64,000 nucleotides of DNA from Obrimoposthia wandeli (lineage: Eukaryota): positions 1-64,000 of the forward strand of contig CDROCS010001209.1 in NCBI GenBank assembly GCA_977020255.1, written 5' to 3'. The notes beneath the pieces were generated by a model, which made no database searches, was not told where the DNA came from, and saw only the letters and a program-made list of their open reading frames with translations. A program made the translations under genes and the position numbers. This document shows, piece after piece, positions 719 through 52,203 of the stretch. Within the stretch, counting starts at the first letter, position 1. Every line of letters begins with the position of its first letter.

Positions 719-754
<36 letters not shown>

Positions 755-887: not shown

Positions 888-942
<55 letters not shown>

Positions 943-1037
943 CTCTTGACATCCAGAGAATTCGCTAGAGATAGCTTAGTGCCTTTCGGAAATTCTGGAG
1001 ACAGTGCTGCATGGCTGTCGTCAGCTCGTGTTGTGAA

Positions 1038-1070
<33 letters not shown>

Positions 1071-1129
1071 TATCCTTGTTTGCCAGCACGTAATGGTGTA
1101 AACCCAGGGTATTCGTTTATGCGATAAAC

Positions 1130-1167
<38 letters not shown>

Positions 1168-1325
1168 CTTACGAGTAGGGCTACACACGTGCTACAATGG
1201 CGTATACAGAGGGCTGCCAACCAGCGATGGTGAGCGAATCCCACAAAGTACGTCGTAGTCCGGATCGGAGTCTGCAACTCGACTCCGTGAAGTCGGAATC
1301 GCTAGTAATCGTGAATCAGAATGTC

Positions 1326-1379
<54 letters not shown>

Positions 1380-1500
1380 GGCTGCACCAGAAGTAGATAG
1401 CTTAACCTTCGGGAGGGCGTTTACCACGGTGTGGTTCATGACTGGGGTGAAGTCGTAACAAGGTAGCCCTAGGGGAACCTGGGGCTGGATCACCTCCTTA
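1..1500 (+). rRNA. rrs: 16S rRNA (5' end cut by window edge; patchy sequence lesions)
   Basis: Universal motifs ACTCCTACGGGAGGCAGCAG, GTGCCAGCAGCCGCGGTAA, AAGTCGTAACAAGG and anti-SD GGATCACCTCCTTA ending at 1500. Confidence 0.98.
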
Positions 1501-1573
1501 CCTAAAGATTTATTGTTTGATGCAGTGTCCACACAGATTGCTTGGTTAAAATGTCAAAGAACGTGAAAGACTT

Positions 1574-1589
1574 GGGTCTGTAGCTCAGG

Positions 1590-1622
<33 letters not shown>

Positions 1623-1650
1623 GGTGGTTCAAGTCCACTCAGACCCACCA
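1574..1650 (+). tRNA. tRNA-Ile(GAT)
   Basis: 77-nt cloverleaf GGGTCTGTAGCTCAGG...CTGATAA...GTTCAAGTCC...CAGACCCACCA in the 16S-23S spacer. Confidence 0.97.
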
Positions 1651-1695
1651 CTTTCTCCTCCCAGAGAAAAGTGGTTGCAAGTCTTTTGAAACGTT

Positions 1696-1771
1696 GGGGT
1701 TATAGCTCAGCTGGGAGAGCGCCTGCCTTGCACGCAGGAGGTCTGCGGTTCGATCCCGCATAGCTCCACCA
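1696..1771 (+). tRNA. tRNA-Ala(TGC)
   Basis: 76-nt cloverleaf, anticodon loop CTTGCAC, G3:U70 pair, encoded CCA. Confidence 0.97.
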
Positions 1772-1855
1772 CTTTCTAAATGCATTCTGACTCGTTAAGA
1801 GTGGAGTGTGGTTAGAAAGTGGATTATTTGTCTCTACGGAGATAGAAAAAACACA

Positions 1856-1868
1856 TGTTCTTTAACAA
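1856..1868 (+). promoter_or_regulatory. Spacer BoxA antitermination element
   Basis: TGTTCTTTAACAA at the usual position before 23S; matches BoxA TGCTCTTTAACA with one change. Confidence 0.8.
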
Positions 1869-2082
1869 TCTGGAAAGCTGACTAGTAAATTCAATCGAAT
1901 GATTGAATTACAAATGTTTTTATCCCTCTTTATTTTAAGAGCGGTAAAAACGAGTTCTCAAAACAAACACACATTCAAGTGTCTTGTGTAAGAGTCCGGC
2001 GAAAACAAACCTCTCTTGCTCTTGTAAAAGAACAAGCAGAGAAACCTTGGTTGTTGCCATACGAAACCTCTTGGGGTTGTAT

Positions 2083-3058
2083 GGTTAAGTGACTAAGCGT
2101 ACACGGTGGATGCCTTGGCAGTCAGAGGCGATGAAGGACGTATTAACTTGCGATAAGCCTAGTTTAGATAGTAAAAATCACTTGAGACTAGGATTTCCGA
2201 ATGGGGAAACCCAGCTGCATAAGCAGTTATCATTACGTGAATACATAGCGTAATGAGGCGAACCGGGGGAACTGAAACATCTAAGTACCCCGAGGAAGAG
2301 AAATCAATTGAGATTCCGGCAGTAGCGGCGAGCGAACCCGGATTAGCCCTTAAGCGGCATTAGCGTTAGGTGAAGGTACTGGAAAGTACAGCGATACAGG
2401 GTGATAGCCCCGTAACCGACAACGCTTTTACCGTGAAATCGAGTAGGACGGGACACGTGATATCCTGTTTGAACATGGGGGGACCATCCTCCAAGGCTAA
2501 ATACTCCTGACTGACCGATAGTGAACCAGTACCGTGAGGGAAAGGCGAAAAGAACCCCTGTGAGGGGAGTGAAATAGAACCTGAAACCGTGTACGTACAA
2601 GCAGTAGGAGCCTCCGTCTCTTGTAGACAAAGTGGGGTGACTGCGTACCTTTTGTATAATGGGTCAGCGACTTAATTTTAGTAGCAAGGTTAACCGTTTA
2701 GGGGAGCCGTAGGGAAACCGAGTCTTAACTGGGCGTACAGTTGCTAGGATTAGACCCGAAACCAAGTGATCTAGCCATGGGCAGGTTGAAGGTGAGGTAA
2801 CACTTACTGGAGGACCGAACCGACTAATGTTGAAAAATTAGCGGATGACTTGTGGCTAGGGGTGAAAGGCCAATCAAACTTGGAGATAGCTGGTTCTCCC
2901 CGAAAGCTATTTAGTAGCGCCTCGGACGAATACTACTGGGGGGTAGAGCACTGTTAAGGCTAGGGGGGTCATCCCGACTTACCAACCCTTTGCAAACTCC
3001 GAATACCAGTAAGTACTATCCGGGAGACACACGGCTGGTGCTAACGTCCGTCGTGAAA

Positions 3059-3089
<31 letters not shown>

Positions 3090-3993
3090 AAAGTTATAGC
3101 TAAGTGGGAAACGATGTGGAAAGGCTCAGACAGCCAGGATGTTGGCTGGCGGCAGAGAAGCAGCCATCATTTAAAGAAAGCGTAATAGCTCACTGGTCGA
3201 GTCGATCTGCGCGGAAGATTTAACGGGGCTAAGCTATACACCGAAGCTGCGGCAATATATCTTGTTATATTGGGGAGGGGAAACGTTCTGTAAGCCGTTG
3301 AAGAAGTCAATCGTAAGGTTGGCTGGAGGTATCAGAGGGGTAGAATGCTGACATGAGTAACGATAAAGGGAGTGAAAAACTCCCTCGCCGGAAGATCAAG
3401 GGTTCCTGTCCAACGTTAATCAGGGCAGGGTGAGTCGACCCCTAAGGCGAGGCCGAAAGGCGTAGTCGATGGGAAACGGGTCACTATTCCCGTACGGCTT
3501 GTTACCGCGATGGGGGGACGGCGGAGGGTCGGTGGGCTTGGCGCCGGTGGTCGAAGTTCAAGGGTGTAGGCTGGAATCTTAGGCAAATCCGGGATTTCCT
3601 CTTTAAGTCGAGAAGGCTGAGACCCGATGTCGAGTCACTCGATTTACAGTGATGAAGCCATTGATGCCATGCTTCCAGGAAAATCTTCTAAGCTTCAGGT
3701 TAGTAGGAATCGTACCCCAAACCGACACAGGTGGTTGGGTAGAGAATACCAAGGCGCTTGAGAGAACTCGGCTGAAGGAACTAGGCAAAATGGTACCGTA
3801 ACTTCGGGAGAAGGTACGCTCCCGACGGTGATGAGACTTGCTCTCTAAGCTGTTGGGAGTCGCAGATACCAGGTGGCTGCAACTGTTTATCAAAAACACA
3901 GTACTGTGCAAACTCGCAAGAGGAAGTATACGGTATGACGCCTGCCCGGTGCCGGAAGGTTAATTGATTGGGTTATCTTCGGAGAAGCTCATG

Positions 3994-4091
<98 letters not shown>

Positions 4092-4158
4092 GGCCACGCT
4101 GTCTCCAGCCGAGACTCAGTGAAGTTGAAATTGCGGTGAAGATGCCGTATACCCGCGG

Positions 4159-4191
<33 letters not shown>

Positions 4192-4349
4192 GCTTGGCAC
4201 TGAACATTGAACCTACATGTGTAGGATAGGTGGGGAGACTATGAAATACGGGCGCTAGTTCGTATGGAGTCGTCCTGAAATACCACCCTTGTATGCTTGA
4301 TGTTCTAACGTTGGCCCCTTATCGGGGTTGCGGACAGTGCCTGGTGGGT

Positions 4350-4392
<43 letters not shown>

Positions 4393-4513
4393 ACGAAGGT
4401 GGGCTAATCACGGTCGGACATCGTGAGGTTAGTGCAATGGCATAAGCCCGCTTGACTGCGAGAATGACAATTCGAGCAGGTGCGAAAGCAGGTCATAGTG
4501 ATCCGGTGGTTCT

Positions 4514-4569
<56 letters not shown>

Positions 4570-4598
4570 ACCGCCCAAGAGTTCATATCGACGGCGGT

Positions 4599-4641
<43 letters not shown>

Positions 4642-4643
4642 TC

Positions 4644-4676
<33 letters not shown>

Positions 4677-4845
4677 TGGTACGCGAGCTGGGTTTAGAAC
4701 GTCGTGAGACAGTTCGGTCCCTATCTGCCGTGGGCGTTGGATGATTGAAGGGGGCTGCTCCTAGTACGAGAGGACCGGAGTGGACGAACCTCTGGTGTTC
4801 GGGTTGTTACGCCAGTAGCATTGCCCGGTAGCTAAGTTCGGAATC

Positions 4846-4876
<31 letters not shown>

Positions 4877-5012
4877 GAGCCCTGAGATGAGTCATCCCTG
4901 ATACTATAAGTATCCTAAAGGGTTGTTGAAGACTACGACGTTGATAGGCAGGGTGTGTAAGTGCTGCGAGGCATTGAGCTAACCTGTACTAATTGCCCGT
5001 GAGGCTTAACCA
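2083..5012 (+). rRNA. rrl: 23S rRNA (patchy lesions about 2900-3700)
   Basis: Starts GGTTAAGTGACTAAGCG and ends GAGGCTTAACCA; peptidyl-transferase region (GGGATAACAGG, CTCGATGTCGGCTC) and sarcin-ricin loop AGTACGAGAGGACC are intact. Confidence 0.97.
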
Positions 5013-5148
5013 TACAACACCCAAGGGGTTTTTTACGGACTCCACGAACACTTGAATGGTGTTTGAGAACCATTGTTTGTTATCGAAAGATAAACTAGTT
5101 AGATTTTCCAAGATTGCTATTGTTAGCATTGCTGACAATAAAAGAATT

Positions 5149-5263
5149 TGTCTGGCGACCATAGCGCTGTGGCTCCACCTGATCCCATGCCGAACTCAGA
5201 AGTGAAACGCAGTTGCGCCGATGGTAGTGTGGGGTCTCCCCATGTGAGAGTAGGTATGCCAGT
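5149..5263 (+). rRNA. rrf: 5S rRNA copy 1
   Basis: TGTCTGGCGACCATAGC...CCATGCCGAACTCAGAAGTGAAA...GATGGTAGTGTGGGG; the 3' end looks corrupted (TAGGTATGCCAG). Confidence 0.92.
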
Positions 5264-5313
5264 TCCCAATTTTAAGTTTGTGTTGTTAACAACGTGAACT
5301 GTGTAAAAGAATT

Positions 5314-5431
5314 TACTTGGCGACCATAGCACTATAGAACCACCTGATCCCATGCCGAACTCAGAAGTGAAATATAGTTGCGCCGATGGTAGTGTGGGGT
5401 CTCCCCATGTGAGAGTAGGTCATTGCCAAGT
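5314..5431 (+). rRNA. rrf: 5S rRNA copy 2 (divergent sequence class)
   Basis: Complete 5S with helix I ACTTGGC/GCCAAGT and the conserved CCGAAC loop. Confidence 0.95.
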
Positions 5432-5544
5432 TCCCTATTCGTATTCATCTTTTTAACTTTTTATTTAAAGGAAGAGATGAAGACAAAAATAAAACGGTGA
5501 ACCGTTTTATTGTAAGTAATAGCATTATGCTGAATAGACACTGC

Positions 5545-5621
5545 GGAGTGGTAGTTCAGTTGGTTAGAATACCGGCCTGTCACGCCGGGGGTCGCGGGTT
5601 CGAGTCCCGTCCACTCCGCCA
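5545..5621 (+). tRNA. tRNA-Asp(GTC)
   Basis: 77-nt cloverleaf GGAGTGG...CTGTCAC...GTTCGAGTCC...CCACTCCGCCA. Confidence 0.97.
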
Positions 5622-6693: not shown

Positions 6694-7890
6694 ATGGAAA
6701 GGTTCAACTGGAAACCTTTATTGCTAGCGTGTTTAATTGTCAGTATTGGACAGTTAAGCTTAGGGTTAGTATTCCCATCCTTACCTTGGATCGCGCAAGA
6801 TCTTAATGTTAGCGCCGATCAAGCCCAATTATTAGTCTCTGTTTATCTTCTAGGTTTTGGTCCTTCTCAATTAGTATATGGCCCACTTTCAGATGTATTT
6901 GGTCGTCGACCTATTTTATTGTCAGGCTTATTAATTGCTCTACTCGGTTTAATTATTGCTGTTACGCATGCAGATTCATTTTCATGGTTATTAGCCGGAC
7001 GCTTTGTTCAAGGTTTAGGGGCGGGTAGTGTTGCTGTATTAGCCAGAGCAACCTTGCGTGATTGCTATCAAAACCAGAATTTTGTGAAAGCGATGACATG
7101 GGTCGCTATTGTCGCAGCTTTTACACCCATCGTTGCACCTGTAATTGGTGGTTTGGTTAACCATTATTGGGGTTGGCTAACGGTCTTTATCATTTTGTTG
7201 GCCTATATAGGGTTGATTTGGCTTGTACTGTTATTAGCCTTTACCGAAACACTTAATCAAACCAATAAACCTGAGTCTGTCGGTAAATTGGTGGTGTCTT
7301 ATTTCTCGTTAATGCGTGAACGCCATTTTCTTAGTTTTGCTGGAATCGGCTGGATCAACTTTTCATTAGTGGTGATTTCAATCTCGTTAATGCCGTTTAT
7401 TATGCAAGTGCAAATCGGTATGAGCTCTGAAAAATATGCATTATGGGCGATGATCCCTGCTTTTGGCATGCTTTCTGGTGGCTTATTATGCCAGCGAATA
7501 CGGCCTATTTTCGGCACGCAAAAAGTGTTGCAGATTGCACCTTTTATTCATTTGATTGCGGGTGTTGTATTGTTCTTTTCTCCAGTGACTCCGCAGTGGA
7601 TCAGTGCTGGTCACTTTTTACTCGCGATGGCAAATGGCATGGCTTTTCCGTGTGCACAATCAATGTTATTGATTCCATATGGCAGCCGAGCAGGGACTGT
7701 TTCCGCCTTATCGGGAGCTTGCCAAATGGTGTTTGCATCATTGATCAGCGGTTTTTTATTACGATTAGGCATGAGTCAACCATGGCATTTAGGGTTGGTA
7801 TTGTTGATTGCAGCAGGCTTAGGGCTGATACTGGTGAGTATTGGTGCAAAAAGTGAAAGTGGTAAACAAGCAGCAGCTGCATTAAATTAA
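6694..7890 (+). CDS. Bcr/CflA-family MFS multidrug efflux transporter
   Basis: AAGGAG RBS; MFS motif A (GPLSDVFGRRPIL); about 12 hydrophobic segments; GxxAGxxSAL motif near the C-terminus. Confidence 0.9.
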   Translation: MERFNWKPLLLACLIVSIGQLSLGLVFPSLPWIAQDLNVSADQAQLLVSVYLLGFGPSQLVYGPLSDVFGRRPILLSGLLIALLGLIIAVTHADSFSWLLAGRFVQGLGAGSVAVLARATLRDCYQNQNFVKAMTWVAIVAAFTPIVAPVIGGLVNHYWGWLTVFIILLAYIGLIWLVLLLAFTETLNQTNKPESVGKLVVSYFSLMRERHFLSFAGIGWINFSLVVISISLMPFIMQVQIGMSSEKYALWAMIPAFGMLSGGLLCQRIRPIFGTQKVLQIAPFIHLIAGVVLFFSPVTPQWISAGHFLLAMANGMAFPCAQSMLLIPYGSRAGTVSALSGACQMVFASLISGFLLRLGMSQPWHLGLVLLIAAGLGLILVSIGAKSESGKQAAAALN

Positions 7891-7977
7891 TCCGACATAG
7901 AGACACTAAACCATACTTTCATAATGATACTATTATTAATAGCAGGTAATGAAACGCTATAGGTTAAGGAAGTAAGT

Positions 7978-8313
7978 ATGGCGAGGTTAATGGTGTTTAC
8001 TGTCCTGATCATCTTGTTTGGTTGTGCTGCTCAGTACGAAGCCGATCTCTCTGAAAATAAAGAGTGGCAGAAACTTGGCGCTTATCATGGTGAGCAAGGT
8101 TACCGTGAATTAAAAGCGAACAAATTGAATGATCTTGGCGCATTAACAGAAACCGAATATGAATCTTACCGAGCGGGTTACTTAAAAGGACGGTTTGATT
8201 ACTGTTCGGGAAGGCAGACCGTGACAACAGTGATTAATCAAGGTTACCCCGATGATTGTGCTACCCCGAAACAAGGGCGCAGTAGCTACAGTGTGATTGA
8301 GCGTGGATATTGA
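7978..8313 (+). CDS. Lipoprotein, DUF2799/YfiL-like
   Basis: Lipobox LFGC; WxxxG...G and YxxGYxxGxxxYC pattern typical of DUF2799. Confidence 0.75.
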   Translation: MARLMVFTVLIILFGCAAQYEADLSENKEWQKLGAYHGEQGYRELKANKLNDLGALTETEYESYRAGYLKGRFDYCSGRQTVTTVINQGYPDDCATPKQGRSSYSVIERGY

Positions 8314-8345
8314 GTTGTGTTCTTGTACCATTCTGGAGCAGACAG

Positions 8346-8370
8346 AAAAGGCTACCGAGGTAGCCTTTTT
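8346..8370. terminator. Bidirectional terminator
   Basis: AAAAGGCTACC-GA-GGTAGCCTTTT between convergent genes. Confidence 0.8.
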
Positions 8371-8412
8371 AATGCGTGATATTTACATGCACGTATCTAC
8401 TAAGCAATTAGC

Positions 8413-9444
8413 TTAGTTGTTGCTGTGAAGCTCACTGTTAAGCTCAACCGCAGACTTATTCGTCAAACATTCAATCTGACCGGTGATTGAGTTACGACGG
8501 AACAGTAAGTCAACTTTACCCGCAAGATCTCGTGCTTTGGCGATTTCAACTTCTTTGCCTTCATTATCAAGCATACGCACCTTAGTACCCGCTGTTACAT
8601 ACAGACCAGATTCAATCGTACAACGATCGCCCATTGGGAAGCCCAAGCCAGCGTTTGCGCCTAATAAGCAGTTTTCACCGATAGAGATAACCATCTTACC
8701 GCCACCAGATAATGTACCCATGATAGAGGCGCCGCCGCCAATATCAGATCCTTCGCCAACCATTACGCCTGCAGAAATACGACCTTCAACCATGCTCACA
8801 CCTGTTGTACCTGCATTGAAGTTGATGAAGCCTTCATGCATTACTGTTGTGCCTTCGCCAACATGTGCGCCTAAACGAACACGAGAAGTATCAGCAATAC
8901 GAACTCCAGCAGGTACGATGTAATCAACCATTTTAGGGAATTTATCAACACAATCGACGATGATAACTTCGCCATTCAAGCGTGCATCCATTTGACGTTC
9001 TGCAAGCTCTGGTAAGTCAATAGGTCCTTTGTTGGTCCATGCGATGTTATGTAACAGGCCGAAGATGCCATCAAGTACTACGCCATGAGGTTTCACTAGA
9101 CGGTGCGAGATAAGTTGAAGCTTTAGGAAGCCTTCAGAAACAGATGTTGGCGCTGCATCTGTCGCCAGAATTACAAGAATCAATGTCTGTGAAGATTGTG
9201 ATGCTTTCGCTGCAAATTGTGCACTTTTTTCATCACCAGCAGCTTGAAATATAACCGTAAGATCAGCGCATTGAGTTGGAGTCACTTCGATAGACTGGTT
9301 GCCTTCTTTATAAGAAACAACGGCAGCGACTGCTTTAACAAGTTCTTCTGAAGGGTTAAGCGTAGGTGTCGGGAAAAATGCTTCGATGATTTTTCCGTCA
9401 CGGTTTTTAGTCGCAGTACCTAAGGCAATTGAAAAGCTAGCCAT
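8413..9444 (-). CDS. dapD: Tetrahydrodipicolinate N-succinyltransferase (long form)
   Basis: VDKFPKMVDY, RVRLGAHVGEGTTVMHEGFINFNAGT, hexapeptide repeats, LFRRNS; GGAG RBS. Confidence 0.93.
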   Translation of the reverse strand: MASFSIALGTATKNRDGKIIEAFFPTPTLNPSEELVKAVAAVVSYKEGNQSIEVTPTQCADLTVIFQAAGDEKSAQFAAKASQSSQTLILVILATDAAPTSVSEGFLKLQLISHRLVKPHGVVLDGIFGLLHNIAWTNKGPIDLPELAERQMDARLNGEVIIVDCVDKFPKMVDYIVPAGVRIADTSRVRLGAHVGEGTTVMHEGFINFNAGTTGVSMVEGRISAGVMVGEGSDIGGGASIMGTLSGGGKMVISIGENCLLGANAGLGFPMGDRCTIESGLYVTAGTKVRMLDNEGKEVEIAKARDLAGKVDLLFRRNSITGQIECLTNKSAVELNSELHSNN

Positions 9445-9747
9445 TATTAATTGTTCTCCATTTCAAATATTTTCAGAGCTGGATCAGTTTGATCATTAAA
9501 AAGCTCGTCGCTGAATTTGTATAAATTGGTATTACATTAAAACCATCATAAAGACAGTTGAAGCGATATAGAAGGGCTGAATAAGCAATCAGTCAAAAAT
9601 GACAGCAATATGACGAGAATAATAGTAAGACAATATTTGAATATGCATAAAAAAACCCCCTAGATAGGAGGTTTATTCATTTAGAGGCAATAAAAAAATG
9701 AAGGATTAAGCTCAGTTATTGTTTACCTCTGAAATCATTATTAATGA

Positions 9748-10050
9748 TTAAGCCGCTTCATCTTGTGATTGTTCTTCAACAATTTTAGCAGATTCAGCTT
9801 TCTTTTTAGGTGCTGGTTTTGCTTTTTTAGCACCTAAAGCGATCAATACTTCTTCACGCTTTTGCGCTAAAAATAATGATAATTCTTCTTGTTTAGCTTC
9901 ATCTTCAAAAAGTTCACTAGCAGCAAGCAAAGTAAACATTTCATCAGCCATATCAAGCATTTTGTCGTATGCGTCAGCTTCGGTCTTAGAGGTGAAAGTC
10001 ATCTTTTCTTCTCCGTTGCGCTCAACTACATATTTGACGATAACAGCCAT
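9748..10050 (-). CDS. yebG: YebG-family DNA-damage-inducible protein
   Basis: MAVIVKYVVERNGEEKMTFTSKTEADAYDKMLD is the YebG signature; start moved to the ATG at 10050 behind GGAGAGG. Confidence 0.88.
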   Translation of the reverse strand: MAVIVKYVVERNGEEKMTFTSKTEADAYDKMLDMADEMFTLLAASELFEDEAKQEELSLFLAQKREEVLIALGAKKAKPAPKKKAESAKIVEEQSQDEAA

Positions 10051-10074
10051 GGTCACCCTCTCCAAAAATTGATT

Positions 10075-10094
10075 TACTGGCTGCTTATACAGTA
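10075..10094. promoter_or_regulatory. LexA (SOS) box
   Basis: Minus strand TACTGTATAAGCAGCCAGTA = CTG-N10-CAG with TA/TA flanks, just upstream of yebG. Confidence 0.88.
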
Positions 10095-10133
10095 GTATGG
10101 CGTCTTCTGTCCAGTAGTAAGCGTGTTAATGTG

Positions 10134-10820
10134 ATGGTGAAAGAAAAGTTTTCTCAAATTTATACTCGAGCGTCTGAAAGAAAAGGCGGGGACTCTGCAC
10201 TGGAAAGTTTGCTGTCAGCGCCCTTAAGTGCTCAGGAAATAAAAAAAATACCGGATGATCGATGGTTAGCTGCTTTTTCACAGAAGGTGTTTCAATGTGG
10301 TATTAGCTGGAAAGTTGTCCGCAGTAAGTGGCCTAATTTCGAAGAGGTTTTTTTTCAGTTTAACATTGAAAAAATGCTGTTGATGCCAGCTGATATGTGG
10401 GAGCGAAAATCGACTGACCCTGCGATTATTCGCCATCTAGCTAAAGTCATGACGATTCCCGCGAATGCGCAAATGATCCATGAGGCTGCACTTGAATATG
10501 ATTCTTTTGCGGCAATGGTCGCTGATTGGCCAGAAAGTGACATCATTGGCTTATGGCGTTATATGAAGAAAAATGGCAAACGTCTGGGTGGTAATACGGG
10601 CCCTTATACTTTACGTGTAATGGGCAAAGATACGTTTTTATTGACTCAAGATGTGGAGTCTTATTTACGTAATACCGGCGTCATTGATGGGGGGCGAGAT
10701 ACTCAAAAGTCTTTATTAGCCACGCAACACGCGTTTAATGATTGGCAGCAAGAAACTGGCCGTCCATTGTCTCAGATCAGCCAGATCATTTCGTTTAGTT
10801 GTGGTGATAATCGGTTTTAA
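10134..10820 (+). CDS. DNA-3-methyladenine glycosylase I (Tag)-family protein
   Basis: DDRWLAAFSQKVFQCGISWKVVRSKWPNFEEVFFQF and IIRHLAKV resemble the Tag family; GKRLGGNTG; an alternative GTG start is at 10131. Confidence 0.75.
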   Translation: MVKEKFSQIYTRASERKGGDSALESLLSAPLSAQEIKKIPDDRWLAAFSQKVFQCGISWKVVRSKWPNFEEVFFQFNIEKMLLMPADMWERKSTDPAIIRHLAKVMTIPANAQMIHEAALEYDSFAAMVADWPESDIIGLWRYMKKNGKRLGGNTGPYTLRVMGKDTFLLTQDVESYLRNTGVIDGGRDTQKSLLATQHAFNDWQQETGRPLSQISQIISFSCGDNRF

Positions 10821-10832
10821 CTTGACCCTAGA

Positions 10833-11723
10833 CTATCGCTGTAAATCCCACTTCTGGCAAAAGTTTAGAAATAGTTTAAGAAGTGGGCTTTGGTATTTTT
10901 CTTTATGAAAAAGTAACCAATATTGGCGACGCATATCTAAGGGTAAGTTAAGAATGACTAACCGATTATCGTTCACGGCATGTTGAATGGCTAACTTTGA
11001 TAAGCAAGTGATACCTAAGTTTGCAGCAACACAATTAATGATAGCTTCGGTTGTATTGAGTTCAAATGCTTGGTGCCATTTTTCTAATCGAGGTGATATG
11101 CGGTTTAAGAAGAATTCACGCGTGCCAGACCCCGGCTCTCTTAACACCCACTCAGAATTTTCTAAATCGACCAAGCGCAGGTTATTAATCAGGGTTAATG
11201 GGTGACTAGGGTGGCAAGCGACAACCATTTCATCATCGAGCCAAGGCTCTGTCACAAGATTATCTTGCTGTACTTTACCTTCTACTAAACCGATATCGAG
11301 TTCAAACTCATTCAATTTGTGACAAATTTGCGCAGTATTAGAAATAAACAGTGATTGATCATAGTGCTGCGAGCTCTCGCGAAAATCTCTTAATAAAAAT
11401 GGGGTAATTTGATTGCCCACCGTATCACTCGAGCCAATTTTCAGGTTACCTGTGACAGGGCCTGCTTGATCAAATAAATTCTCAATGGAATGACTACGCG
11501 ACAGTAATTCATCGGCTAAAGGAAGCAATCGCTTGCCTTGTTCATTAATGATAAGGCGATTATTATTGCGATCAAAAAGCTTATGATCGAGTTGTTTTTC
11601 GAGCTCCGATAACGCCATGCTGACAGCGGGCTTAGATAAAAACAGTTTGTCAGCTGCTGCCGTAATGGTCCGTTCTTGTACGACGGTGACAAAAACTTTT
11701 AATTGCTTCAGCACAATGTTCAT
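10833..11723 (-). CDS. LysR-family regulator, YeiE/CysL-like
   Basis: N-terminal LysR HTH; DIGLVEG, WLDDEMVV and WVLREPGSGTRE motifs match the YeiE/CysL subfamily. Confidence 0.9.
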   Translation of the reverse strand: MNIVLKQLKVFVTVVQERTITAAADKLFLSKPAVSMALSELEKQLDHKLFDRNNNRLIINEQGKRLLPLADELLSRSHSIENLFDQAGPVTGNLKIGSSDTVGNQITPFLLRDFRESSQHYDQSLFISNTAQICHKLNEFELDIGLVEGKVQQDNLVTEPWLDDEMVVACHPSHPLTLINNLRLVDLENSEWVLREPGSGTREFFLNRISPRLEKWHQAFELNTTEAIINCVAANLGITCLSKLAIQHAVNDNRLVILNLPLDMRRQYWLLFHKEKYQSPLLKLFLNFCQKWDLQR

Positions 11724-28947: not shown

Positions 28948-29138
28948 AAAAAAAAAGCACTGCGTTGGGCGCAGTGCTAAGAATAAATTTTTGACAGACA
29001 GGTCAAACAAAAAAGAAGTAAATGGTAGATTCACTACCTGTCCGACACAACTCGGACAATATGCAAACACAACATCACAACATTGACTTAACCGATAATG
29101 CCAGAGGGCAGAATATCAGACGCTTAAGCCTACGTTGT
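28948..29138 (-). ncRNA. gcvB: GcvB small RNA
   Basis: Divergent from gcvA; GU-rich R1 seed TGTTGTGATGTTGTGTTTGCA, CCTGTCTGTC R3 motif, terminator AGCACTGCG-CCCAA-CGCAGTGCT-T run. Confidence 0.93.
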
Positions 29139-39897: not shown

Positions 39898-40054
39898 ACT
39901 GTATTTGACACTCTTGGATTAGAATATGTGTGCGATTCTGCTTATGACCGCATAACGTTGTATTAACGTTAAGGCGAGGATAAGTTGAAGCGTCACTGAT
40001 TTTTTTTAAAAATACTATAGTGCAAAGTTTACTTAATCTTTAATGAGGTTGCGA

Positions 40055-40609
40055 ATGAATCATCCTGTTGCTGTCGCTTTATCTGACTTTTCTTCTCTTT
40101 TTTTACAAGCTTGGCGTGATGCAGGTCACGGTTTTCCACGTAGCGAAGATTTAGTTGGGCTTGAGTCACCATGTGTTGAACATGATTCTGGTGATGAAGT
40201 GACATGGAAGCCTATTACTCGTCAACCACAGGGGGATTTAGCTGGGGTTGAAAAGGGCATTGAAATTGATCTACATACAGATATTGTCGATTTTTATAGC
40301 ATCCAATTTAGTGGTGATATGTCAGCAAAATTTGGTGACCTTGAGTTAGACTTATTACAAGTGTTCAGCGAGCAAGATGGCATACGTTTACAAGAAAATA
40401 TTCTTGGACACCTTGTGACGCAACGTCGTTTGAAATTAAAGCCAACGGTTTTTATCGGTGTTATTGATAGTGCTGATAAAGTGATCGCAATATGTAATCT
40501 AACCGGTGAGGTCATACTTGAAACCTTGGGTAAAAATGAACGTGATGTGTTAGCAAAAAATGTGGCAAGTTTTTTACAGCAGTTAGTACCCGTAGTGCGT
40601 GAGGTTTAA
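40055..40609 (+). CDS. syd: SecY-interacting protein Syd
   Basis: SPCVE, WKP, LQENILGHLVTQRRLKLKPTVFIG; divergent from queF as in enterics. Confidence 0.93.
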   Translation: MNHPVAVALSDFSSLFLQAWRDAGHGFPRSEDLVGLESPCVEHDSGDEVTWKPITRQPQGDLAGVEKGIEIDLHTDIVDFYSIQFSGDMSAKFGDLELDLLQVFSEQDGIRLQENILGHLVTQRRLKLKPTVFIGVIDSADKVIAICNLTGEVILETLGKNERDVLAKNVASFLQQLVPVVREV

Positions 40610-41476: not shown

Positions 41477-41752
41477 CTAATGATTTACATTTTCTAATTG
41501 GGTAAGACGAGCCGTTAGATCCGCAACTTGTTGTTCAAGTTGTTTTATACGTTCTTCATTGGAGAGGCTAGGTTCTGCTCTCTCAATTTTTGGTACTTTT
41601 GCATTTTTCTTCCACGCTTGTAGTGCCTTTATAATAAGGGGCATTGGTAGCGGCTCAGTTAATCGCGCTTTAATTAATGCAACGGAAGGTTCTTTGCCTT
41701 CAGCAATAAGAGAGGTAATCGCCTGTTCTAGCGCGAAGGTAATCGTCGACAT
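41477..41752 (-). CDS. Small hypothetical protein, possible KfrA-N-like DNA-binding domain plus coiled coil
   Basis: 91 aa; GKEPSVALIKARL followed by the heptad tail EERIKQLEQQVADLTARLTQLE. Confidence 0.7.
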   Translation of the reverse strand: MSTITFALEQAITSLIAEGKEPSVALIKARLTEPLPMPLIIKALQAWKKNAKVPKIERAEPSLSNEERIKQLEQQVADLTARLTQLENVNH

Positions 41753-41797: not shown

Positions 41798-42028
41798 CTA
41801 TTTTCGTAGCAAAGTATCTAATTGATCAATGACTTCACTCCAATCGGCATCCTGTTCTTGGGATTCTTTTAAAAATCGTTTCTGAGCGGGCTGCCAGAAA
41901 CTGGCTTCGGTTAACGTCTCATTTTGTTCAAGATGATGCTCACAAAGGAATGATTCAATGAATGATTGAGAATTGTTTAGCCCTAATTGGCTGAAAAGGT
42001 TTGATAAATTATGATTGAATGTTTCCAT
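41798..42028 (-). CDS. DUF2789-family protein
   Basis: LFSQLGL, FWQPAQKRFLKE, DADWSEVIDQLD. Confidence 0.8.
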   Translation of the reverse strand: METFNHNLSNLFSQLGLNNSQSFIESFLCEHHLEQNETLTEASFWQPAQKRFLKESQEQDADWSEVIDQLDTLLRK

Positions 42029-42185
42029 ATCTATATTCCTTTGAAGTCGGTTTTTATTGTAAATGAAACTCGCATACCTGTTATGAATGTAGGATAAATT
42101 TGGCTATTAACACCAATTTTTGATGGTGATTTGCGTTAAGTCGATAAAAAATGGTGAGAGTTTAAAGACATATATCTACTTGGCT

Positions 42186-42203
42186 TGTAAGAGATCTCTT
42201 ACA
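42186..42203. promoter_or_regulatory. UvrY/VarA (GacA) binding box for csrB copy 1
   Basis: TGTAAG-AGATCT-CTTACA, inside a perfect 24-bp palindrome (42183-42206). Confidence 0.9.
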
Positions 42204-42372
42204 AGCATGTGCGCCTTTTAAGTTAATGCTGCCAGAGTTAAGCTGACTGAGTTATTTAAGTTGTTGTTTTTAATGCAATTCTGTTTTAGTGATGAATGTT
42301 GTTATGAGAAGTGTGATTGAAGTCCGCTTTGCCTCCCTTGTTCTAAAATTCTAAAAGCGTAATCTTATTGGT

Positions 42373-42807
42373 GTCGGAAGGAACTGACGGAACGGAACAG
42401 GAAAAAGCCAAGGATTTGGTAGTCTCAGGATGAGACCGGTATATCAGGATGATATATCGAACATGGATAGTGAAAGGACCACCGAAGGATTCGGTAACAG
42501 TAAGCAGGATATTTACTGGTCAGGATGACAAAAGGACCACTTCAGGACGAAGTTAGGGACACCTCTAGGATAGAGGCATAAAGGAACACTTCAGGATTGA
42601 AGTAAAGGACACCTCCAGGAAGGAGATGAGAGTTGATATAGGATGTATCGACGGGTTAAGGATAGCCAAAGGATCTCTTCAGGACGAAGATAAAAGGACA
42701 ATGCTGACGGATTACAGCAGTCAATGGAATGATGCAGGGAGCACCATAGTAGCCGGATTGCTGCAAGTAAGACCTAAGGGCGCGACGCAAGTCGCGCCCG
42801 CTCTTTT
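42373..42807 (+). ncRNA. csrB: CsrB-family sRNA copy 1
   Basis: About 31 GGA motifs by hand count, many in CAGGA(T/C)G hairpin loops; TAATCT -10; terminator GGGCGCGAC-GCAA-GTCGCGCCC; located at the syd-yqcC locus. Confidence 0.93.
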
Positions 42808-42980
42808 ATGTCTGCTATAAAATTATTCTTATCCAGAATGGTATTGTTTCATTTCTCCTCTTTTTATCTTTAACTCAATGTATTTAAAGCGTATTTATTG
42901 AATAATATGTTGAGTTATTGTTATTGTTCCTGCCTATTTATCCCAAATGAAATCGATTACTAGATATTGTTTATTTCAGG

Positions 42981-42998
42981 CGTGAGAGATCTCTTACA
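42981..42998. promoter_or_regulatory. UvrY/VarA binding box for csrB copy 2
   Basis: CGTGAG-AGATCT-CTTACA. Confidence 0.85.
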
Positions 42999-43167
42999 AG
43001 TTCGTGGGAAAACTGTATTTTAGTTTGCGACTATTACGCAGTGTATGAAATTAAATTGTTTTAATTCAATCGATTAACATTTTGTTGTGAAGTTGTTATA
43101 TTTTTTATTTACATCATATTATTTCTTGTCCATGTCTAACGTATGCATATCGGGTAATATCTCTCTT

Positions 43168-43693
43168 GTCGGAAGGAACTGACGGAACGGAACAGGAAAA
43201 AGCCAAGGATTTGGTTATCTCAGGAAGAGAGCGGTGTATCAGGATGATATATCGAACATGGATAGTGAAAGGACAATTAAAGGATTTAGCAACAGTAAGC
43301 AGGATGTTTACTGTTCAGGATGACGAAGGACCACTTCAGGATGAAGTTAGGGACACCTCTAGGATAGAGGCTCAAAGGATTTACTTCAGGATGAAGTTAA
43401 GGACACCTCTAGGATAGAGGTTCAAAGGATTTACTTCAGGATGAAGTTAGGGACACCTCTAGGATAGAGGCTCAAGGATTTGCTTCAGGATGAAGTCAGG
43501 GACACCTTCAGGATAGAAGAGAGAGTTGAAGCAGGATTATTCAACGGGTCAGGGAATACCGTAGGACACTCTAGGATAGAGTGGGGAATTATGCTTTAGG
43601 AAGAAGCACATCATGGAATGATGCAGGGAGCATAGGCGTAGCGGGATTGCTGCAAGTGAGATCTAAAGGCGTGACGAAAGTCACGCCTTTTCT
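43168..43693 (+). ncRNA. csrB: CsrB-family sRNA copy 2 (expanded)
   Basis: Same 5' motif GTCGGAAGGAACTGAC; about 38 GGA motifs; TAATAT -10; terminator AAAGGCGTGAC-GAAA-GTCACGCCTTTT. Confidence 0.93.
43333..43516 (+). repeat. 50-nt internal tandem repeat (about 3.5 copies) inside csrB copy 2
   Basis: ACTTCAGGATGAAGTTAGGGACACCTCTAGGATAGAGGCTCAAAGGATTT at 43333, 43383 and 43433, with a partial fourth copy. Confidence 0.9.
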
Positions 43694-43755
43694 CGTTTCT
43701 GCCATTTTCGAATTGTTCGTGTTGTTGATGGCTAATCTACTATGTCTTTCTACTT

Positions 43756-43773
43756 TGTGCGAGATCTCTTACA
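43756..43773. promoter_or_regulatory. UvrY/VarA binding box for csrB copy 3
   Basis: TGTGCG-AGATCT-CTTACA. Confidence 0.85.
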
Positions 43774-43942
43774 AAATTGTGGGAAATCATGTGATTTCAG
43801 GTCAGCTTTAAATATGACATTATTGTTAAGTATTTGTTTTGTATGTCTTTTTGTTTATTTCTGATTCGTGGTGTTTATTTTGTCATACGGTATTTTTGGC
43901 AGGGTGGTTCTTTTTTTTAGGATTCGGCGTAATCTTATTGGT

Positions 43943-44358
43943 GTCGGAAGGAACTGACGGAACGGAACAGGAAAAAGCCAAGGATTTGGTAGTCTCAGGA
44001 TGATGTATCGAACATGGATAGTAAAAGGATCACCGAAGGATTCGGTAACAGTAAGCAGGATGTTTACTGGTCAGGATGACAAAAGGACCACTTCAGGACG
44101 AAGTTAGGGACACCTCTAGGATAGAGGCATAAAGGAACACTTCAGGATTGAAGTAAAGGACACCTCCAGGAAGGAGATGAGAGTTGATATAGGATGTATC
44201 GACGGGTTAAGGAAAGCCAAAGGATCTCTTCAGGACGAAGATAAAAGGACAATGCTGACGGATTACAGCAGTCAATGGAATGATGCAGGGAGCACCATAG
44301 TAGCCGGATTGCTGCAAGTAAGACCTAAGGGCGCGACGCAAGTCGCGCCCGCTCTTTT
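43943..44358 (+). ncRNA. csrB: CsrB-family sRNA copy 3
   Basis: Near-identical to copy 1 apart from a 19-nt deletion and about 5 substitutions; same terminator; about 30 GGA motifs. Confidence 0.93.
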
Positions 44359-44432
44359 ATGTCTGATATCTAACATTCAATGTTTGCTATTGCGCTTTAT
44401 CCTACCGTTAACGAGCATCTGCTTCAGTATCA

Positions 44433-44747
44433 TTAATCAATTTCAACATCTGGAATATGATGAGCAGGCACATAGAACGTCATGGGTCTAAACCTTTTCA
44501 TTTCGACAACCCCTTCATAATAGTCATGACCATTGGCAGAGAATTCAAACAAGTACACCGTTCGCCATCCCCAATTACCTTTATTATCTTTTAGTTTATG
44601 GGAACCTCTTGCTGTGCTGAGTAATTGCAAGCCAAGATTTTTACAACGTTGTTTAATGAACTTTTCGGCGAGTTCAGTTTGGCGTCGTTGTTGCCAAAAT
44701 AAATATGCGCCGAATGCGACCAGCAAGATTGCGATTAAGTTATCCAT
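44433..44747 (-). CDS. DUF3301-family protein
   Basis: N-terminal TM, FWQQRRQTELA, CKNLGLQLL, YLFEFSANG. Confidence 0.8.
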   Translation of the reverse strand: MDNLIAILLVAFGAYLFWQQRRQTELAEKFIKQRCKNLGLQLLSTARGSHKLKDNKGNWGWRTVYLFEFSANGHDYYEGVVEMKRFRPMTFYVPAHHIPDVEID

Positions 44748-44808
44748 AACAAATAAAACTATCCTTAATAAAAATCAACAGATCTTAATATCTTTTAAAT
44801 AGCACAGG

Positions 44809-45855
44809 CTATTTACTACGAGCATGTTGTTGAAGTTGGGTTATCGCTTCAATTAGTGCAGGGTTTGCTTGGCTATGAAGAACTTGAAGCATGATTCCAC
44901 GAAGTAAAGGTAACATGACAAGATCAGTAAATAGCTGATTAAACAGTGTTTGATCTTTTGTTTCAGCAAGACGTAATAAGAATAAACTGGCGGTGTCTGT
45001 GTTTGTTAAACCATACCAACAGCGGCCAGCTATCGCGACCAAGACTTCAGGATGACAAAGCTCTGCGTGTTGTAACAAGGCATTAAGCTGCTCTGTAAGC
45101 GTAACAGCGTTGCTACCTGCAAGTGAACGTATCAGAGCGGCCAGTAAGAAGAGATCTGGCTCTGAAGAGGCCATTTCTGTGTGTAATCTTTCTTTTAAAC
45201 GCTTGCTCAGTGTATCTGGAATATCACAATGCTCTAAACAACCCAGTAATGCATAAAGAGGGGTCATTGGCAGGTTTTGCACTGCTTTTCTTAGTAACGT
45301 ACTGTTATTCTCTTGCTTTATTCTTGCACATATATCAGCTAAACCTTGTAGACCGACACCTTGCCATTGATCCCAGCCTAGATCACCACTTAAAAATAGC
45401 TGAGCATGCTCATAATACTGACTGGTCGATAATGAGAGAACGTGACGTAATTGGGCATGAAAAATCGCCATTTTGTCGTCATTAGGCTTAAATGTGTATG
45501 GATTAGCGGCTAATTTCTCTTGTTCCTCTTCTGTCGGCTCAGCATTGAGTGTTGCGCCCATGGCTTCGATAACATACTTAATAAAATCGCCCACAGCGGC
45601 TTGCTTTAATAACCCTCGCTCATCGAGTGGTAAACGTAAGAACCAAACCCAAGGTGCATTATTGTTTTGCCAAAAAGAGATAGAAAGGTGCGCATGCTGC
45701 TGCAATGGCCATGGATAAGGCTGACGATTTTCTTCTACAGCTTTGAATTGCTCGATATCAATTTCGCAAACACGGCGACCAAGATCGAAAATCTTGTACT
45801 GACAACCTGCATTATCAAGTAATTGGGTAAGGGTGTGAAATTTATCCATGGACAT
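44809..45855 (-). CDS. DUF3549-family protein
   Basis: TLTQLL...YKIFDLGRRV, PYPWPLQQHA, WFLRLPLDERGLL, NPYTFKP; AGGAG RBS. Confidence 0.8.
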   Translation of the reverse strand: MSMDKFHTLTQLLDNAGCQYKIFDLGRRVCEIDIEQFKAVEENRQPYPWPLQQHAHLSISFWQNNNAPWVWFLRLPLDERGLLKQAAVGDFIKYVIEAMGATLNAEPTEEEQEKLAANPYTFKPNDDKMAIFHAQLRHVLSLSTSQYYEHAQLFLSGDLGWDQWQGVGLQGLADICARIKQENNSTLLRKAVQNLPMTPLYALLGCLEHCDIPDTLSKRLKERLHTEMASSEPDLFLLAALIRSLAGSNAVTLTEQLNALLQHAELCHPEVLVAIAGRCWYGLTNTDTASLFLLRLAETKDQTLFNQLFTDLVMLPLLRGIMLQVLHSQANPALIEAITQLQQHARSK

Positions 45856-46031
45856 CGTTATTACTCCTAAATCTGACTCGTGAGTATATCAAAGACAGTA
45901 ATTAACTGACTATTCAATTGCGTAAATCATGTCATTAAGCACTTGAATATTTATCGCAAGGTGCATCTCGTTGTTGGGTGTCTGCAAGTGAAATGGTATC
46001 CTTGCGCGCCAATTTCATGAGGATCTGTTGC

Positions 46032-46352
46032 ATGGATAAATATCGTCATAGCATGTTGTTACTAGAAAAACTTGAGGCAGTCTTACACAATGCTGACCTG
46101 TGGGAAAGTGTACCACCAAGCAACGCAGCGCTTGCGAGTGCAGAACCTTTTGCTGTGGATACGCTATCTTGTAGTCAATGGTTGCAATGGATTTTTATTC
46201 CAAAAATGACACAGATTATCGTGCTGAAGCAGCCGTTACCTCAGCATTTTGAGCTTACCTCTTATGTTGAAGAAGCGATGAAAAATGACAGTGGGGTGAA
46301 TATTATTCTTGGCGTAACACGTGAATTAGATAACCTATTTAAGGCTCAATAA
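46032..46352 (+). CDS. yqcC: YqcC-family protein
   Basis: LW...P...ALASAEPFAVDTLSCSQWLQWIFIPKM; directly upstream of truC. Confidence 0.9.
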   Translation: MDKYRHSMLLLEKLEAVLHNADLWESVPPSNAALASAEPFAVDTLSCSQWLQWIFIPKMTQIIVLKQPLPQHFELTSYVEEAMKNDSGVNIILGVTRELDNLFKAQ

Positions 46353-52026: not shown

Positions 52027-52087
52027 GTAATTAGCTAATTTTAGTTTCGACTCTAGTTAGTTAAATTACACATACTTTTATTAATCA

Positions 52088-52203
52088 CTCACACATATCG
52101 ACACATGCTCCGGGGTGCCCACCATTTTTAACAAGGCCATTATGGACTTAGGTAAAATGGGTAGAGGGTCGGTAGGATGGGATATGTGGACGCCTAACCC
52201 CAT
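52088..52203 (+). ncRNA. rpsB (S2) autoregulatory leader (t44-type)
   Basis: CACACATATCG...CCGGGGTGCCC...GGGTCGGT...GGGATATGTGG...TAACCCC. Confidence 0.8.

What the first reader, a model, noticed from the sequence alone, without database searches (positions are those of the whole stretch)
42186..44358. Tandem array of three complete CsrB sRNA genes (about 99 GGA motifs in 2 kb)
Three independent units, each with UvrY/VarA box, -10, GGA-rich body and terminator, are repeated head-to-tail with periods of 795 and 775 bp at the ancestral csrB position between syd and yqcC. Multiple Csr sRNAs are known in Vibrionaceae (V. cholerae CsrB/C/D, V. fischeri CsrB1/B2), but those I know are dispersed. 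A local triplication with about 31+38+30 GGA motifs would be an unusually high-capacity CsrA sponge locus. The ORF track here shows only spurious ORFs, so annotation would likely miss or miscall it.
Basis: partly seen in the sequence, partly recalled or inferred. Interest (0 to 1): 0.8.

Follow-up and report, generated by a model that had tools for sequence, protein, structure and literature searches.

The report
Three tandem CsrB decoy-RNA genes
A Photobacterium carries three head-to-tail csrB genes, each with its own promoter and terminator, encoding decoy RNAs that soak up the regulator CsrA; the array is real, but it was predicted in P. profundum in 2006 and occurs across the genus, so it is ordinary for this group.

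Summary
There are three full-length Rfam CsrB matches on the + strand (130-141 bits against a cut-off of 71). The predicted RNAs carry 31, 38 and 30 GGA motifs. Each unit has an 18-bp UvrY/VarA-type palindrome, a -10 element and an intrinsic terminator. The unit periods are 795 and 775 bp.

Contigs from two public DNA runs bridge the inter-unit junctions, and the same layout occurs in independently assembled relatives, so it is not an assembly artefact. Marine metatranscriptome contigs cover only the three RNA bodies and never the spacers.

The novelty claim fails. The organism is a Photobacterium of the profundum clade. Kulkarni et al. 2006 already listed csrB1, csrB2 and csrB3 in one P. profundum SS9 intergenic region (PBPRA2976/PBPRA2977). 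An RNA-seq study from 2012 annotated CsrB transcripts there. Synteny (t44, CsrB, GcvB) shows it is the same locus.

Of 37 Photobacterium loci I scanned, 20 have three copies here, 6 have two, and 10 are cut off by contig ends.

Modest additions from this work:
- The RNA bodies appear to evolve in concert while their promoters diverge.
- The palindrome sits at a fixed distance of 178.5 bp in all three units.
- The middle copy varies in its number of 50-nt modules.

Another note of this scan on this same stretch had already recorded the fixed spacing (s1-204667).

The parts
42186..42203 (.). UvrY/VarA (GacA-type) box of unit 1, TGTAAGAGATCTCTTACA, a perfect 18-bp palindrome
   Evidence: It is centred 178.5 bp upstream of the conserved 5' motif. 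The E. coli csrB inverted repeat TGTGAGAGATCTCTTACA is centred at -183/-182 (PMC4682653).
42360..42365 (+). Predicted -10 element (TAATCT) of unit 1
   Evidence: Read from the sequence. It is conserved in unit 3. The transcription start is inferred at about 42372 and was not measured.
42372..42810 (+). csrB copy U1, predicted RNA of about 437 nt with 31 GGA; terminator stem 42778-42799
   Evidence: Rfam 140.6 bits over 42498-42811. GGA count. Terminator. In the minimum-free-energy fold, 16 GGA lie in hairpin loops. Metatranscriptome contigs cover only this body.
42981..42998 (.). UvrY/VarA box of unit 2, CGTGAGAGATCTCTTACA (17 of 18 identical to the E. coli csrB box)
   Evidence: PMC4682653.
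43155..43160 (+). Predicted -10 element (TAATAT) of unit 2
   Evidence: Read from the sequence; inferred.
43167..43702 (+). csrB copy U2, predicted RNA of about 534 nt with 38 GGA; 78-79% identical to U1 and U3; terminator stem 43665-43690
   Evidence: Rfam 130.5 bits. Alignment. Terminator. U2-specific RNA contigs in run X15 lie at 43184-43247 and 43443-43656.
43326..43528 (+). Four tandem copies of a 50-nt two-hairpin module inside U2 (one copy in U1 and U3)
   Evidence: Repeat family D3 with spacings of 50, 50 and 49 nt. Orthologous middle copies measure 433, 533 and 583 nt in P. profundum, P. indicum and P. frigidiphilum.
43756..43773 (.). UvrY/VarA box of unit 3, TGTGCGAGATCTCTTACA
43930..43935 (+). 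Predicted -10 element (TAATCT) of unit 3
   Evidence: Read from the sequence; inferred.
43942..44361 (+). csrB copy U3, predicted RNA of about 418 nt with 30 GGA; 98.8% identical to U1 apart from a 19-nt deletion; terminator stem 44329-44350
   Evidence: Rfam 140.2 bits. Alignment. Terminator.
41798..42028 (-). Left neighbour, DUF2789 gene (inferred counterpart of one of PBPRA2976/PBPRA2977; which tag is which was not checked)
   Evidence: Pfam PF10982, E 9.8e-30.
44433..44747 (-). Right neighbour, DUF3301 gene, followed by a DUF3549 gene at 44809-45855 (-)
   Evidence: Pfam PF11743 and PF12069. The DUF3549 protein served as the anchor to fetch 42 related loci.

Best explanation
The region holds three paralogous csrB genes of a Photobacterium in the profundum / indicum / frigidiphilum clade. 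Each is a separate transcription unit. A UvrY/VarA-type response regulator would bind the 18-bp palindrome about 180 bp upstream and activate a sigma-70 promoter, as shown for E. coli csrB. Transcription ends at a strong intrinsic terminator. Each RNA of about 420-535 nt displays 30-38 GGA motifs, about half in loops of short hairpins and most of the rest unpaired. These motifs would sequester CsrA dimers and so relieve CsrA control of its mRNA targets. Shown here: family membership by covariance model, the anatomy of each unit, the integrity of the array in independent data, conservation across the genus, and RNA-level coverage limited to the three bodies. Inferred: the transcription start sites, VarA dependence, CsrA binding and its stoichiometry. 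This locus is the orthologue of the already predicted csrB1-csrB3 cluster of P. profundum SS9.
For: There are three full-length RF00018 matches at 130-141 bits against a cut-off of 71.

Each unit has an inverted repeat, a -10 element and a terminator. The inverted repeat is centred exactly 178.5 bp from the conserved 5' motif in all three units. The E. coli csrB inverted repeat has nearly the same sequence and is centred at -183/-182 (PMC4682653). In six other species the box core lies 179-183 nt (187 nt in one copy) upstream of the nhmmer-defined 5' end in 17 of 18 copies; in the eighteenth no box core was found in the 200 nt searched.

GGA nucleotides have a mean unpaired probability of 0.77-0.82 against 0.41-0.44 overall, and 14-16 GGA per RNA lie in hairpin loops.

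Contigs from public DNA runs bridge the junctions. Run X1 covers 41800-42386, 42785-43196, 43446-43956 and 44336-44800. The body shared by U1 and U3 sits at about 27-28x against about 15x in the flanks. Run X2 has a contig at 42692-43169.

Metatranscriptome runs X15 and X17 show word depths of hundreds to thousands over the three bodies, zero in the bins wholly inside the spacers (42810-43112 and 43719-43819) with 0-14 in the two bins that adjoin the next RNA's start, and 2-60 over the flanking genes.

The same triplet occurs in P. profundum, P. frigidiphilum, P. indicum and P. phosphoreum, and a pair occurs in P. lipolyticum. Sixty of 61 genus genomes have CsrB matches, many as clusters on one contig and strand.

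A single csrA gene is present in each of three close relatives, and one assembly csrA match has the same score and open-frame length.

Literature: PMC1488887 and PMC3505737 supplement. The t44-CsrB-GcvB order and distances agree between the window and SS9.
Against: No transcription start, VarA dependence or CsrA binding was measured for this strain. The RNA evidence comes from contigs of environmental relatives (95-99% alike). Contigs cannot give strand, ends or level, and they cannot separate U1 from U3. No exact IHF consensus site was found in the spacers, so the E. coli looping model is only an analogy.
Confidence: 0.93

Rival explanations
1. Only one or two copies are functional, and the rest are decaying tandem duplicates.
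For: U2 is diverged (78-79% identical to U1 and U3). It evolves faster between species (93-96% against 98-100% for the outer copies). It has lower RNA contig depth (46-127 against 1000-2900 in run X15). U3 has a strain-specific 19-nt deletion.
Against: All three keep the palindrome at the same distance, a -10 element, a strong terminator and full-length Rfam scores well above the cut-off. All three positions are conserved across four species whose orthologous spacers have diverged by 15-21%. U2-specific RNA contigs exist. U2 has the most GGA motifs (38).
Confidence: 0.04
2. The array is an assembly artefact: a mis-expansion or mis-join of a single csrB gene or of copies from different strains.
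For: The window comes from a 1.35-Gb mixed assembly holding several bacteria. U1 and U3 are nearly identical. Many short-read Photobacterium assemblies break at this locus.
Against: Unique spacer-containing contigs in run X1 bridge every junction, and run X2 bridges U1-U2. The shared body sits at about twice the flank depth in X1. The same three-unit layout, with orthologous spacers 79-85% identical position by position, is present in independently assembled P. profundum, P. indicum and P. frigidiphilum genomes.
Confidence: 0.01
3. The three units are made as one long precursor from the first promoter and then processed, rather than as three independent transcripts.
For: All units lie on the same strand with short spacers (about 240-360 bp).
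Against: Each unit ends in a strong GC-rich terminator with 9-11 base pairs. Each has its own activator box at a fixed distance and its own -10 element. RNA contigs give zero depth in the bins wholly inside both spacers.
Confidence: 0.02

Closest known systems
P. profundum SS9 csrB1, csrB2 and csrB3 (intergenic region PBPRA2976/PBPRA2977; Kulkarni et al. 2006, PMC1488887; annotated as PBPRA2976a-d in Campanaro et al. 2012, PMC3505737)
   Same: This is the orthologous locus. The flanks match, the t44-CsrB-GcvB synteny matches, and there are three units on the strand opposite both neighbours. The outer copies are 98.4-98.8% identical to the window's and the middle copy 94.5%.
   Different: The SS9 middle copy is 433 nt against 536 nt here, so it has fewer 50-nt modules. 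Both SS9 outer copies are 438 nt, whereas the window's U3 carries a 19-nt deletion.
E. coli CsrB (Rfam RF00018), activated by BarA-UvrY
   Same: It belongs to the same covariance-model family and uses GGA hairpin repeats. Its 18-bp inverted repeat is nearly identical and also lies about 180 bp upstream. It sits in the same syd/yqcC neighbourhood.
   Different: E. coli has a single csrB gene at the locus. The Photobacterium RNAs carry a 5' extension of about 90-220 nt beyond the Rfam match with extra GGA sites. Five extra ORFs separate the array from syd and yqcC.
Adjacent csrB duplicates elsewhere: Aliivibrio salmonicida csrB3 next to csrB2 (Nguyen et al. 2018, PMC6262261) and Colwellia psychrerythraea csrB1 and csrB2 in one intergenic region (PMC1488887)
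   Same: These are local duplications that give sibling CsrB sRNAs side by side.
   Different: They are pairs, not triplets. They lie at other loci or in other lineages.
V. cholerae CsrB, CsrC and CsrD, and V. tasmaniensis CsrB1-4
   Same: They are redundant VarS/VarA-dependent CsrA sponges, and the copies are differentially regulated (PMC6262261).
   Different: The copies lie in separate synteny groups rather than in one head-to-tail array.

Membership tests
CsrB/RsmB sRNA family (Rfam RF00018) | Covariance-model score at or above the curated gathering score over the full model | tested here: met
   140.6, 130.5 and 140.2 bits against 71, model positions 1-356.
CsrB/RsmB sRNA family (Rfam RF00018) | Many GGA motifs exposed in hairpin loops or single-stranded linkers | tested here: met
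   31, 38 and 30 GGA. 14-16 per RNA lie in hairpin loops, and 24-31 have at least 2 of 3 nucleotides unpaired in the minimum-free-energy fold. Mean unpaired probability is 0.77-0.82 against 0.41-0.44 overall. These are predicted structures only.
CsrB/RsmB sRNA family (Rfam RF00018) | Non-coding, ending in a Rho-independent terminator | tested here: met
   Terminator hairpins of 9-11 pairs followed by a T-rich tail at each 3' end. Overlapping ORFs have no Pfam match.
CsrB/RsmB sRNA family (Rfam RF00018) | Transcription driven by a GacA/UvrY/VarA-type regulator through an upstream palindrome (TGTAAG-N6-CTTACA type) | tested here: inconclusive
   The box is present in all three units at a constant distance and nearly identical to the footprinted E. 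coli site. Dependence on VarA was not tested.
CsrB/RsmB sRNA family (Rfam RF00018) | Binds and sequesters CsrA | not testable with these tools
   A single csrA gene is present in each of three close relatives, and a match with the same score and frame length exists in the assembly.
CsrB/RsmB sRNA family (Rfam RF00018) | The RNA is expressed | tested here: inconclusive
   Contigs from two marine-sediment metatranscriptomes cover only the three bodies at high depth. P. profundum RNA-seq reported CsrB transcripts at the orthologous locus. Neither data set is from this strain, and U1 and U3 cannot be told apart.
Photobacterium csrB1-3 tandem cluster (Kulkarni 2006) | Three csrB genes in one intergenic region at the orthologous chromosome-1 locus | tested here: met
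   P. profundum locus L013 has three units downstream of the same DUF3549 gene. Synteny with t44 and GcvB matches the published SS9 coordinates.

The most novel reading that the evidence does not exclude
The array is kept as a concerted-evolution unit. Gene conversion confined to the transcribed bodies would keep two of the three sponge RNAs almost identical while their promoters diverge freely, apart from the activator box and its fixed distance. The cell would then make the same decoy RNA from differently wired promoters. The third copy would tune its capacity by gaining and losing 50-nt two-hairpin modules. In several species, paralogue pairs within one genome cluster together with strong support (ganghwense, MCCC 1A19761, obscurum, carnosum, aquimaris, sanctipauli, malacitanum). 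Where I measured the spacers (ganghwense, obscurum, aquimaris and the window), the paralogous ones are only about 51-57% identical.
Probability: 0.5. Interest if true: 0.35.

Novelty: already known. Interest (0 to 1): 0.2.

Why it matters
The finding adds little on its own. It is the orthologue of a csrB triplet predicted in P. profundum twenty years ago, and the Csr/Rsm sponge mechanism is textbook.

It still has practical value in three ways:
- It documents that a two- or three-copy csrB array at this locus is a trait of the whole genus Photobacterium.
- The array breaks many short-read assemblies, so csrB copy number is under-counted in draft genomes.
- The locus is a clean natural case for studying sibling-sRNA evolution: near-identical RNA bodies, unrelated promoters, a strictly fixed activator-site distance, and variable module number.

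Tried and rejected
- Assembly artefact: rejected, because junction-bridging contigs exist in runs X1 and X2 and three related genomes share the layout.
- Protein-coding reading of the four overlapping ORFs (64-104 aa): no Pfam match.
- IHF consensus (WATCAANNNNTTR, and a relaxed form) in the three spacers: no hit. An E. coli-like IHF bend is therefore not supported by sequence, although the spacers are 64-72% A+T.
- The same array next to the DUF3549 homologue in Vibrio: five Vibrio loci had no CsrB within 6 kb.
- Orthology against gene conversion inside the profundum clade: undecidable. The outer copies are 98-100% identical both within and between species. The conversion signal comes from other clades.
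- Supplementary tables of Kulkarni 2006 are not held as text, so the SS9 coordinates came from Campanaro 2012.
- I could not build my own covariance model of the full unit (length limit), so I used nhmmer and cross-checked it with Rfam.
- Read laying gave contigs only, so there is no information on transcript ends, strand or level.

Full report
**Observation.** A cmscan of the region and of the whole window gives three full-length matches to Rfam RF00018 (CsrB/RsmB) on the + strand. They lie at 42498-42811 (140.6 bits), 43387-43700 (130.5 bits) and 44033-44362 (140.2 bits), against a gathering score of 71.

Each match is the 3' two-thirds or more of a longer unit. A 29-nt motif conserved in all three units starts at 42373, 43168 and 43943. 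Each is preceded by a -10-like hexamer (TAATCT, TAATAT, TAATCT). Each unit ends in a GC-rich terminator hairpin, at 42778-42799, 43665-43690 and 44329-44350.

Taking the units as 42372-42810, 43167-43702 and 43942-44361, the GGA counts are 31, 38 and 30. The repeat periods of 795 and 775 bp are confirmed. The four ORFs that overlap the array have no Pfam match.

**Anatomy.** Each unit carries an 18-bp palindrome at 42186, 42981 and 43756. The sequences are TGTAAGAGATCTCTTACA, CGTGAGAGATCTCTTACA and TGTGCGAGATCTCTTACA. Each is centred exactly 178.5 bp upstream of the conserved 5' motif. The spacers between box and promoter are only 43-57% identical to one another.

In E. coli, UvrY footprints on TGTGAGAGATCTCTTACA, centred at -183/-182 of csrB (PMC4682653). 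So both the sequence and the position of the box match the experimentally defined activator site. In six other Photobacterium species the box core lies 179-183 nt upstream of the unit's 5' end in 16 of 18 copies and 187 nt upstream in one. In the eighteenth no box core was found in the 200 nt searched.

Predicted folds place 14-16 GGA per RNA in hairpin loops and most of the rest in unpaired linkers. The unpaired probability of GGA nucleotides is 0.77-0.82, against 0.41-0.44 overall.

U1 and U3 are 98.8% identical apart from a 19-nt deletion in U3. U2 is 78-79% identical to either. U2 also contains four tandem copies of a 50-nt two-hairpin module that occurs once in U1 and U3.

**Is the array real?** Logan contigs of run X1 hold 90% of the region's sampled words; X1 may be the source sample. 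They cover flank to U1 (41800-42386), U1 to U2 (42785-43196), U2 to U3 (43446-43956) and U3 to flank (44336-44800). The body shared by U1 and U3 sits at about 27-28x against about 15x in unique sequence. An invertebrate-gut metagenome (X2) also bridges U1 to U2. Three relatives assembled independently have the same three-unit layout. An assembly artefact is therefore very unlikely.

**Expression.** Two marine-sediment metatranscriptomes (X15, X17) give contigs over the three bodies only, with word depths in the hundreds to thousands. Depth is zero in the bins wholly inside the spacers (42810-43112 and 43719-43819) and 0-14 in the two bins that adjoin the next RNA's start (43113-43213 and 43820-43920). 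It is 2-60 over the neighbouring protein genes. U2-specific contigs are present at 43184-43247 and 43443-43656.

These are contigs of near relatives, so they show neither strand nor transcript ends, and they cannot separate U1 from U3. They do fit three separate, highly expressed transcripts.

**Organism and neighbours.** The flanking DUF3549 protein is 96-97% identical to those of P. frigidiphilum, P. indicum and P. profundum. The gene order is:
- syd (40043-40609)
- DUF2310 gene
- a 91-aa ORF with no Pfam match
- DUF2789 gene (41798-42028, -)
- the csrB array
- DUF3301 gene (44433-44747, -)
- DUF3549 gene (44809-45855, -)
- yqcC-like DUF446 gene (45978-46352)
- a pseudouridine synthase gene

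The E. coli csrB neighbourhood, yqcC/syd (PMC1488887), is therefore kept only at a distance.

The window belongs to a 1.35-Gb assembly that holds several bacteria. A fourth csrB lies on another contig, C2105 at 391285. It carries the same type of box and scores like the second-chromosome copy of P. profundum.

**Comparison with what is known.** Kulkarni et al. 2006 list csrB1, csrB2 and csrB3 of P. profundum all between PBPRA2976 and PBPRA2977, in orientation '-> <- ->'. They list csrB4 on chromosome 2 and a csrC, and they call this 'a striking example' of multiple copies.

Campanaro et al. 2012 annotate PBPRA2976a-d (3410279-3412056) as putative CsrB. They note that the RNA-seq transcripts are longer than the Rfam prediction. 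In their table t44 lies 7.9 kb on one side of the CsrB features and GcvB 14.9 kb on the other. In the window the distances are 7.7 and 13.2 kb, so it is the same locus.

Rfam scans of P. profundum, P. frigidiphilum, P. indicum and P. phosphoreum each find three clustered copies, and P. lipolyticum has two. Sixty of 61 genomes of the genus have CsrB matches, many as clusters on one contig and strand.

An nhmmer scan of 37 Photobacterium loci anchored on the DUF3549 gene gave these counts (cross-checked by Rfam):
- 20 loci with three units
- 6 loci with two units
- 1 locus with one unit
- 10 loci cut off by a contig end at or inside the array

Five Vibrio loci with a DUF3549 homologue have no CsrB nearby. 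Adjacent csrB duplicates are also reported in Aliivibrio salmonicida (PMC6262261) and predicted in Colwellia psychrerythraea.

**What this work adds.**
- Orthologous promoter spacers of the four profundum-clade genomes are 79-85% identical position by position. Paralogous spacers are 48-57% identical, which is about noise level. The triplet therefore predates these species.
- The outer RNA bodies are nevertheless 98-100% identical within and between these genomes. The middle copy is 93-96% identical between species.
- In a maximum-likelihood tree of 77 units, paralogue pairs from one genome cluster together with strong support. Examples are ganghwense p1+p3 and MCCC 1A19761 p1+p3 (both 100/100), obscurum p1+p3, carnosum p2+p3, aquimaris p2+p3, sanctipauli p2+p3 and malacitanum p2+p3. 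In P. indicum, p1 and p3 are identical.
- The spacers of the three such pairs I measured (ganghwense, obscurum, aquimaris) are only about 51-54% identical. This pattern points to gene conversion limited to the transcribed bodies. That reading is an inference. Strong purifying selection combined with independent duplications is not formally excluded.
- The middle copy's length varies between 433 and 583 nt among close species through changes in module number.

**Mechanism.** A phosphorylated VarA/UvrY-type regulator most likely binds each palindrome and activates each promoter from about -180. The three RNAs accumulate and titrate CsrA through roughly 99 GGA sites. The divergent promoters would allow different inputs to near-identical sponges, as shown for Vibrio tasmaniensis paralogues (PMC6262261). 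Family membership, anatomy, conservation and RNA presence are shown here. VarA dependence, transcription start sites and CsrA binding are inferred.

**Verdict.** It is a new instance of a described, genus-wide cluster. It is also not an extreme sponge locus: a single Moritella csrB gene elsewhere in the same assembly has about 70 GGA by my count (scan note s1-224198). I score interest as low.

Noticed in passing
G000:C506, about 2694615-2695650 (L007:1450-2485, +): This looks like a single csrB-like gene of about 1 kb. It has 16.8 tandem copies of a 50-nt two-hairpin module (94% matches), about 70 GGA and only one terminator, and Rfam CsrB matches it three times at 77-86 bits. It belongs to a different organism from the window. 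Scan note s1-224198 already reports it as a giant Moritella CsrB.
   Followed up: partly
G000:C506:2170146-2170456 and 2171723-2172037 (L005, L006): Two co-directional CsrB genes (98 and 95 bits) lie about 1.58 kb apart with no GGA-rich middle copy. Other notes of this scan say a qnr gene lies between them. I did not check that.
   Followed up: no
L018, L019, L024, L027, L028, L030, L032, L036, L040, L042: In ten Photobacterium draft assemblies the contig ends at or inside the csrB array. The near-identical copies break short-read assemblies, so csrB copy number is under-counted in drafts.
   Followed up: partly
window 43995 region (U3) against 42425-42443 (U1): U3 lacks 19 nt that are present in U1. 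The deletion fuses two 5' hairpins into one. Both outer copies are 438 nt in P. profundum, P. indicum and P. frigidiphilum, so the deletion is specific to this genome.
   Followed up: partly
L041 (P. damselae) 7045-11330: The csrB array starts about 4.3 kb after the DUF3549 gene, instead of about 0.4 kb as in other species. This suggests an insertion between the DUF3549 gene and the array.
   Followed up: no
window 1-5618: An rRNA operon sits at the contig start: a 5'-truncated 16S, two tRNAs, a 23S, two tandem 5S genes (5151-5264 and 5316-5431) and a further tRNA at 5545-5618.
   Followed up: no
window 28949-29138 (-) and 52070-52198 (+): A GcvB sRNA (81 bits) and a t44 RNA (66.7 bits) were detected. 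I used them only as synteny markers against P. profundum SS9.
   Followed up: partly
window 41477-41752 (-): A 91-aa ORF lies between the DUF2310 and DUF2789 genes and has no Pfam match.
   Followed up: no
G000 as a whole: The assembly is 1.35 Gb in 6912 contigs. It has six csrA loci on six different contigs and CsrB genes of at least two bacterial genera. It looks like a host-sized assembly carrying several bacterial genomes.
   Followed up: no
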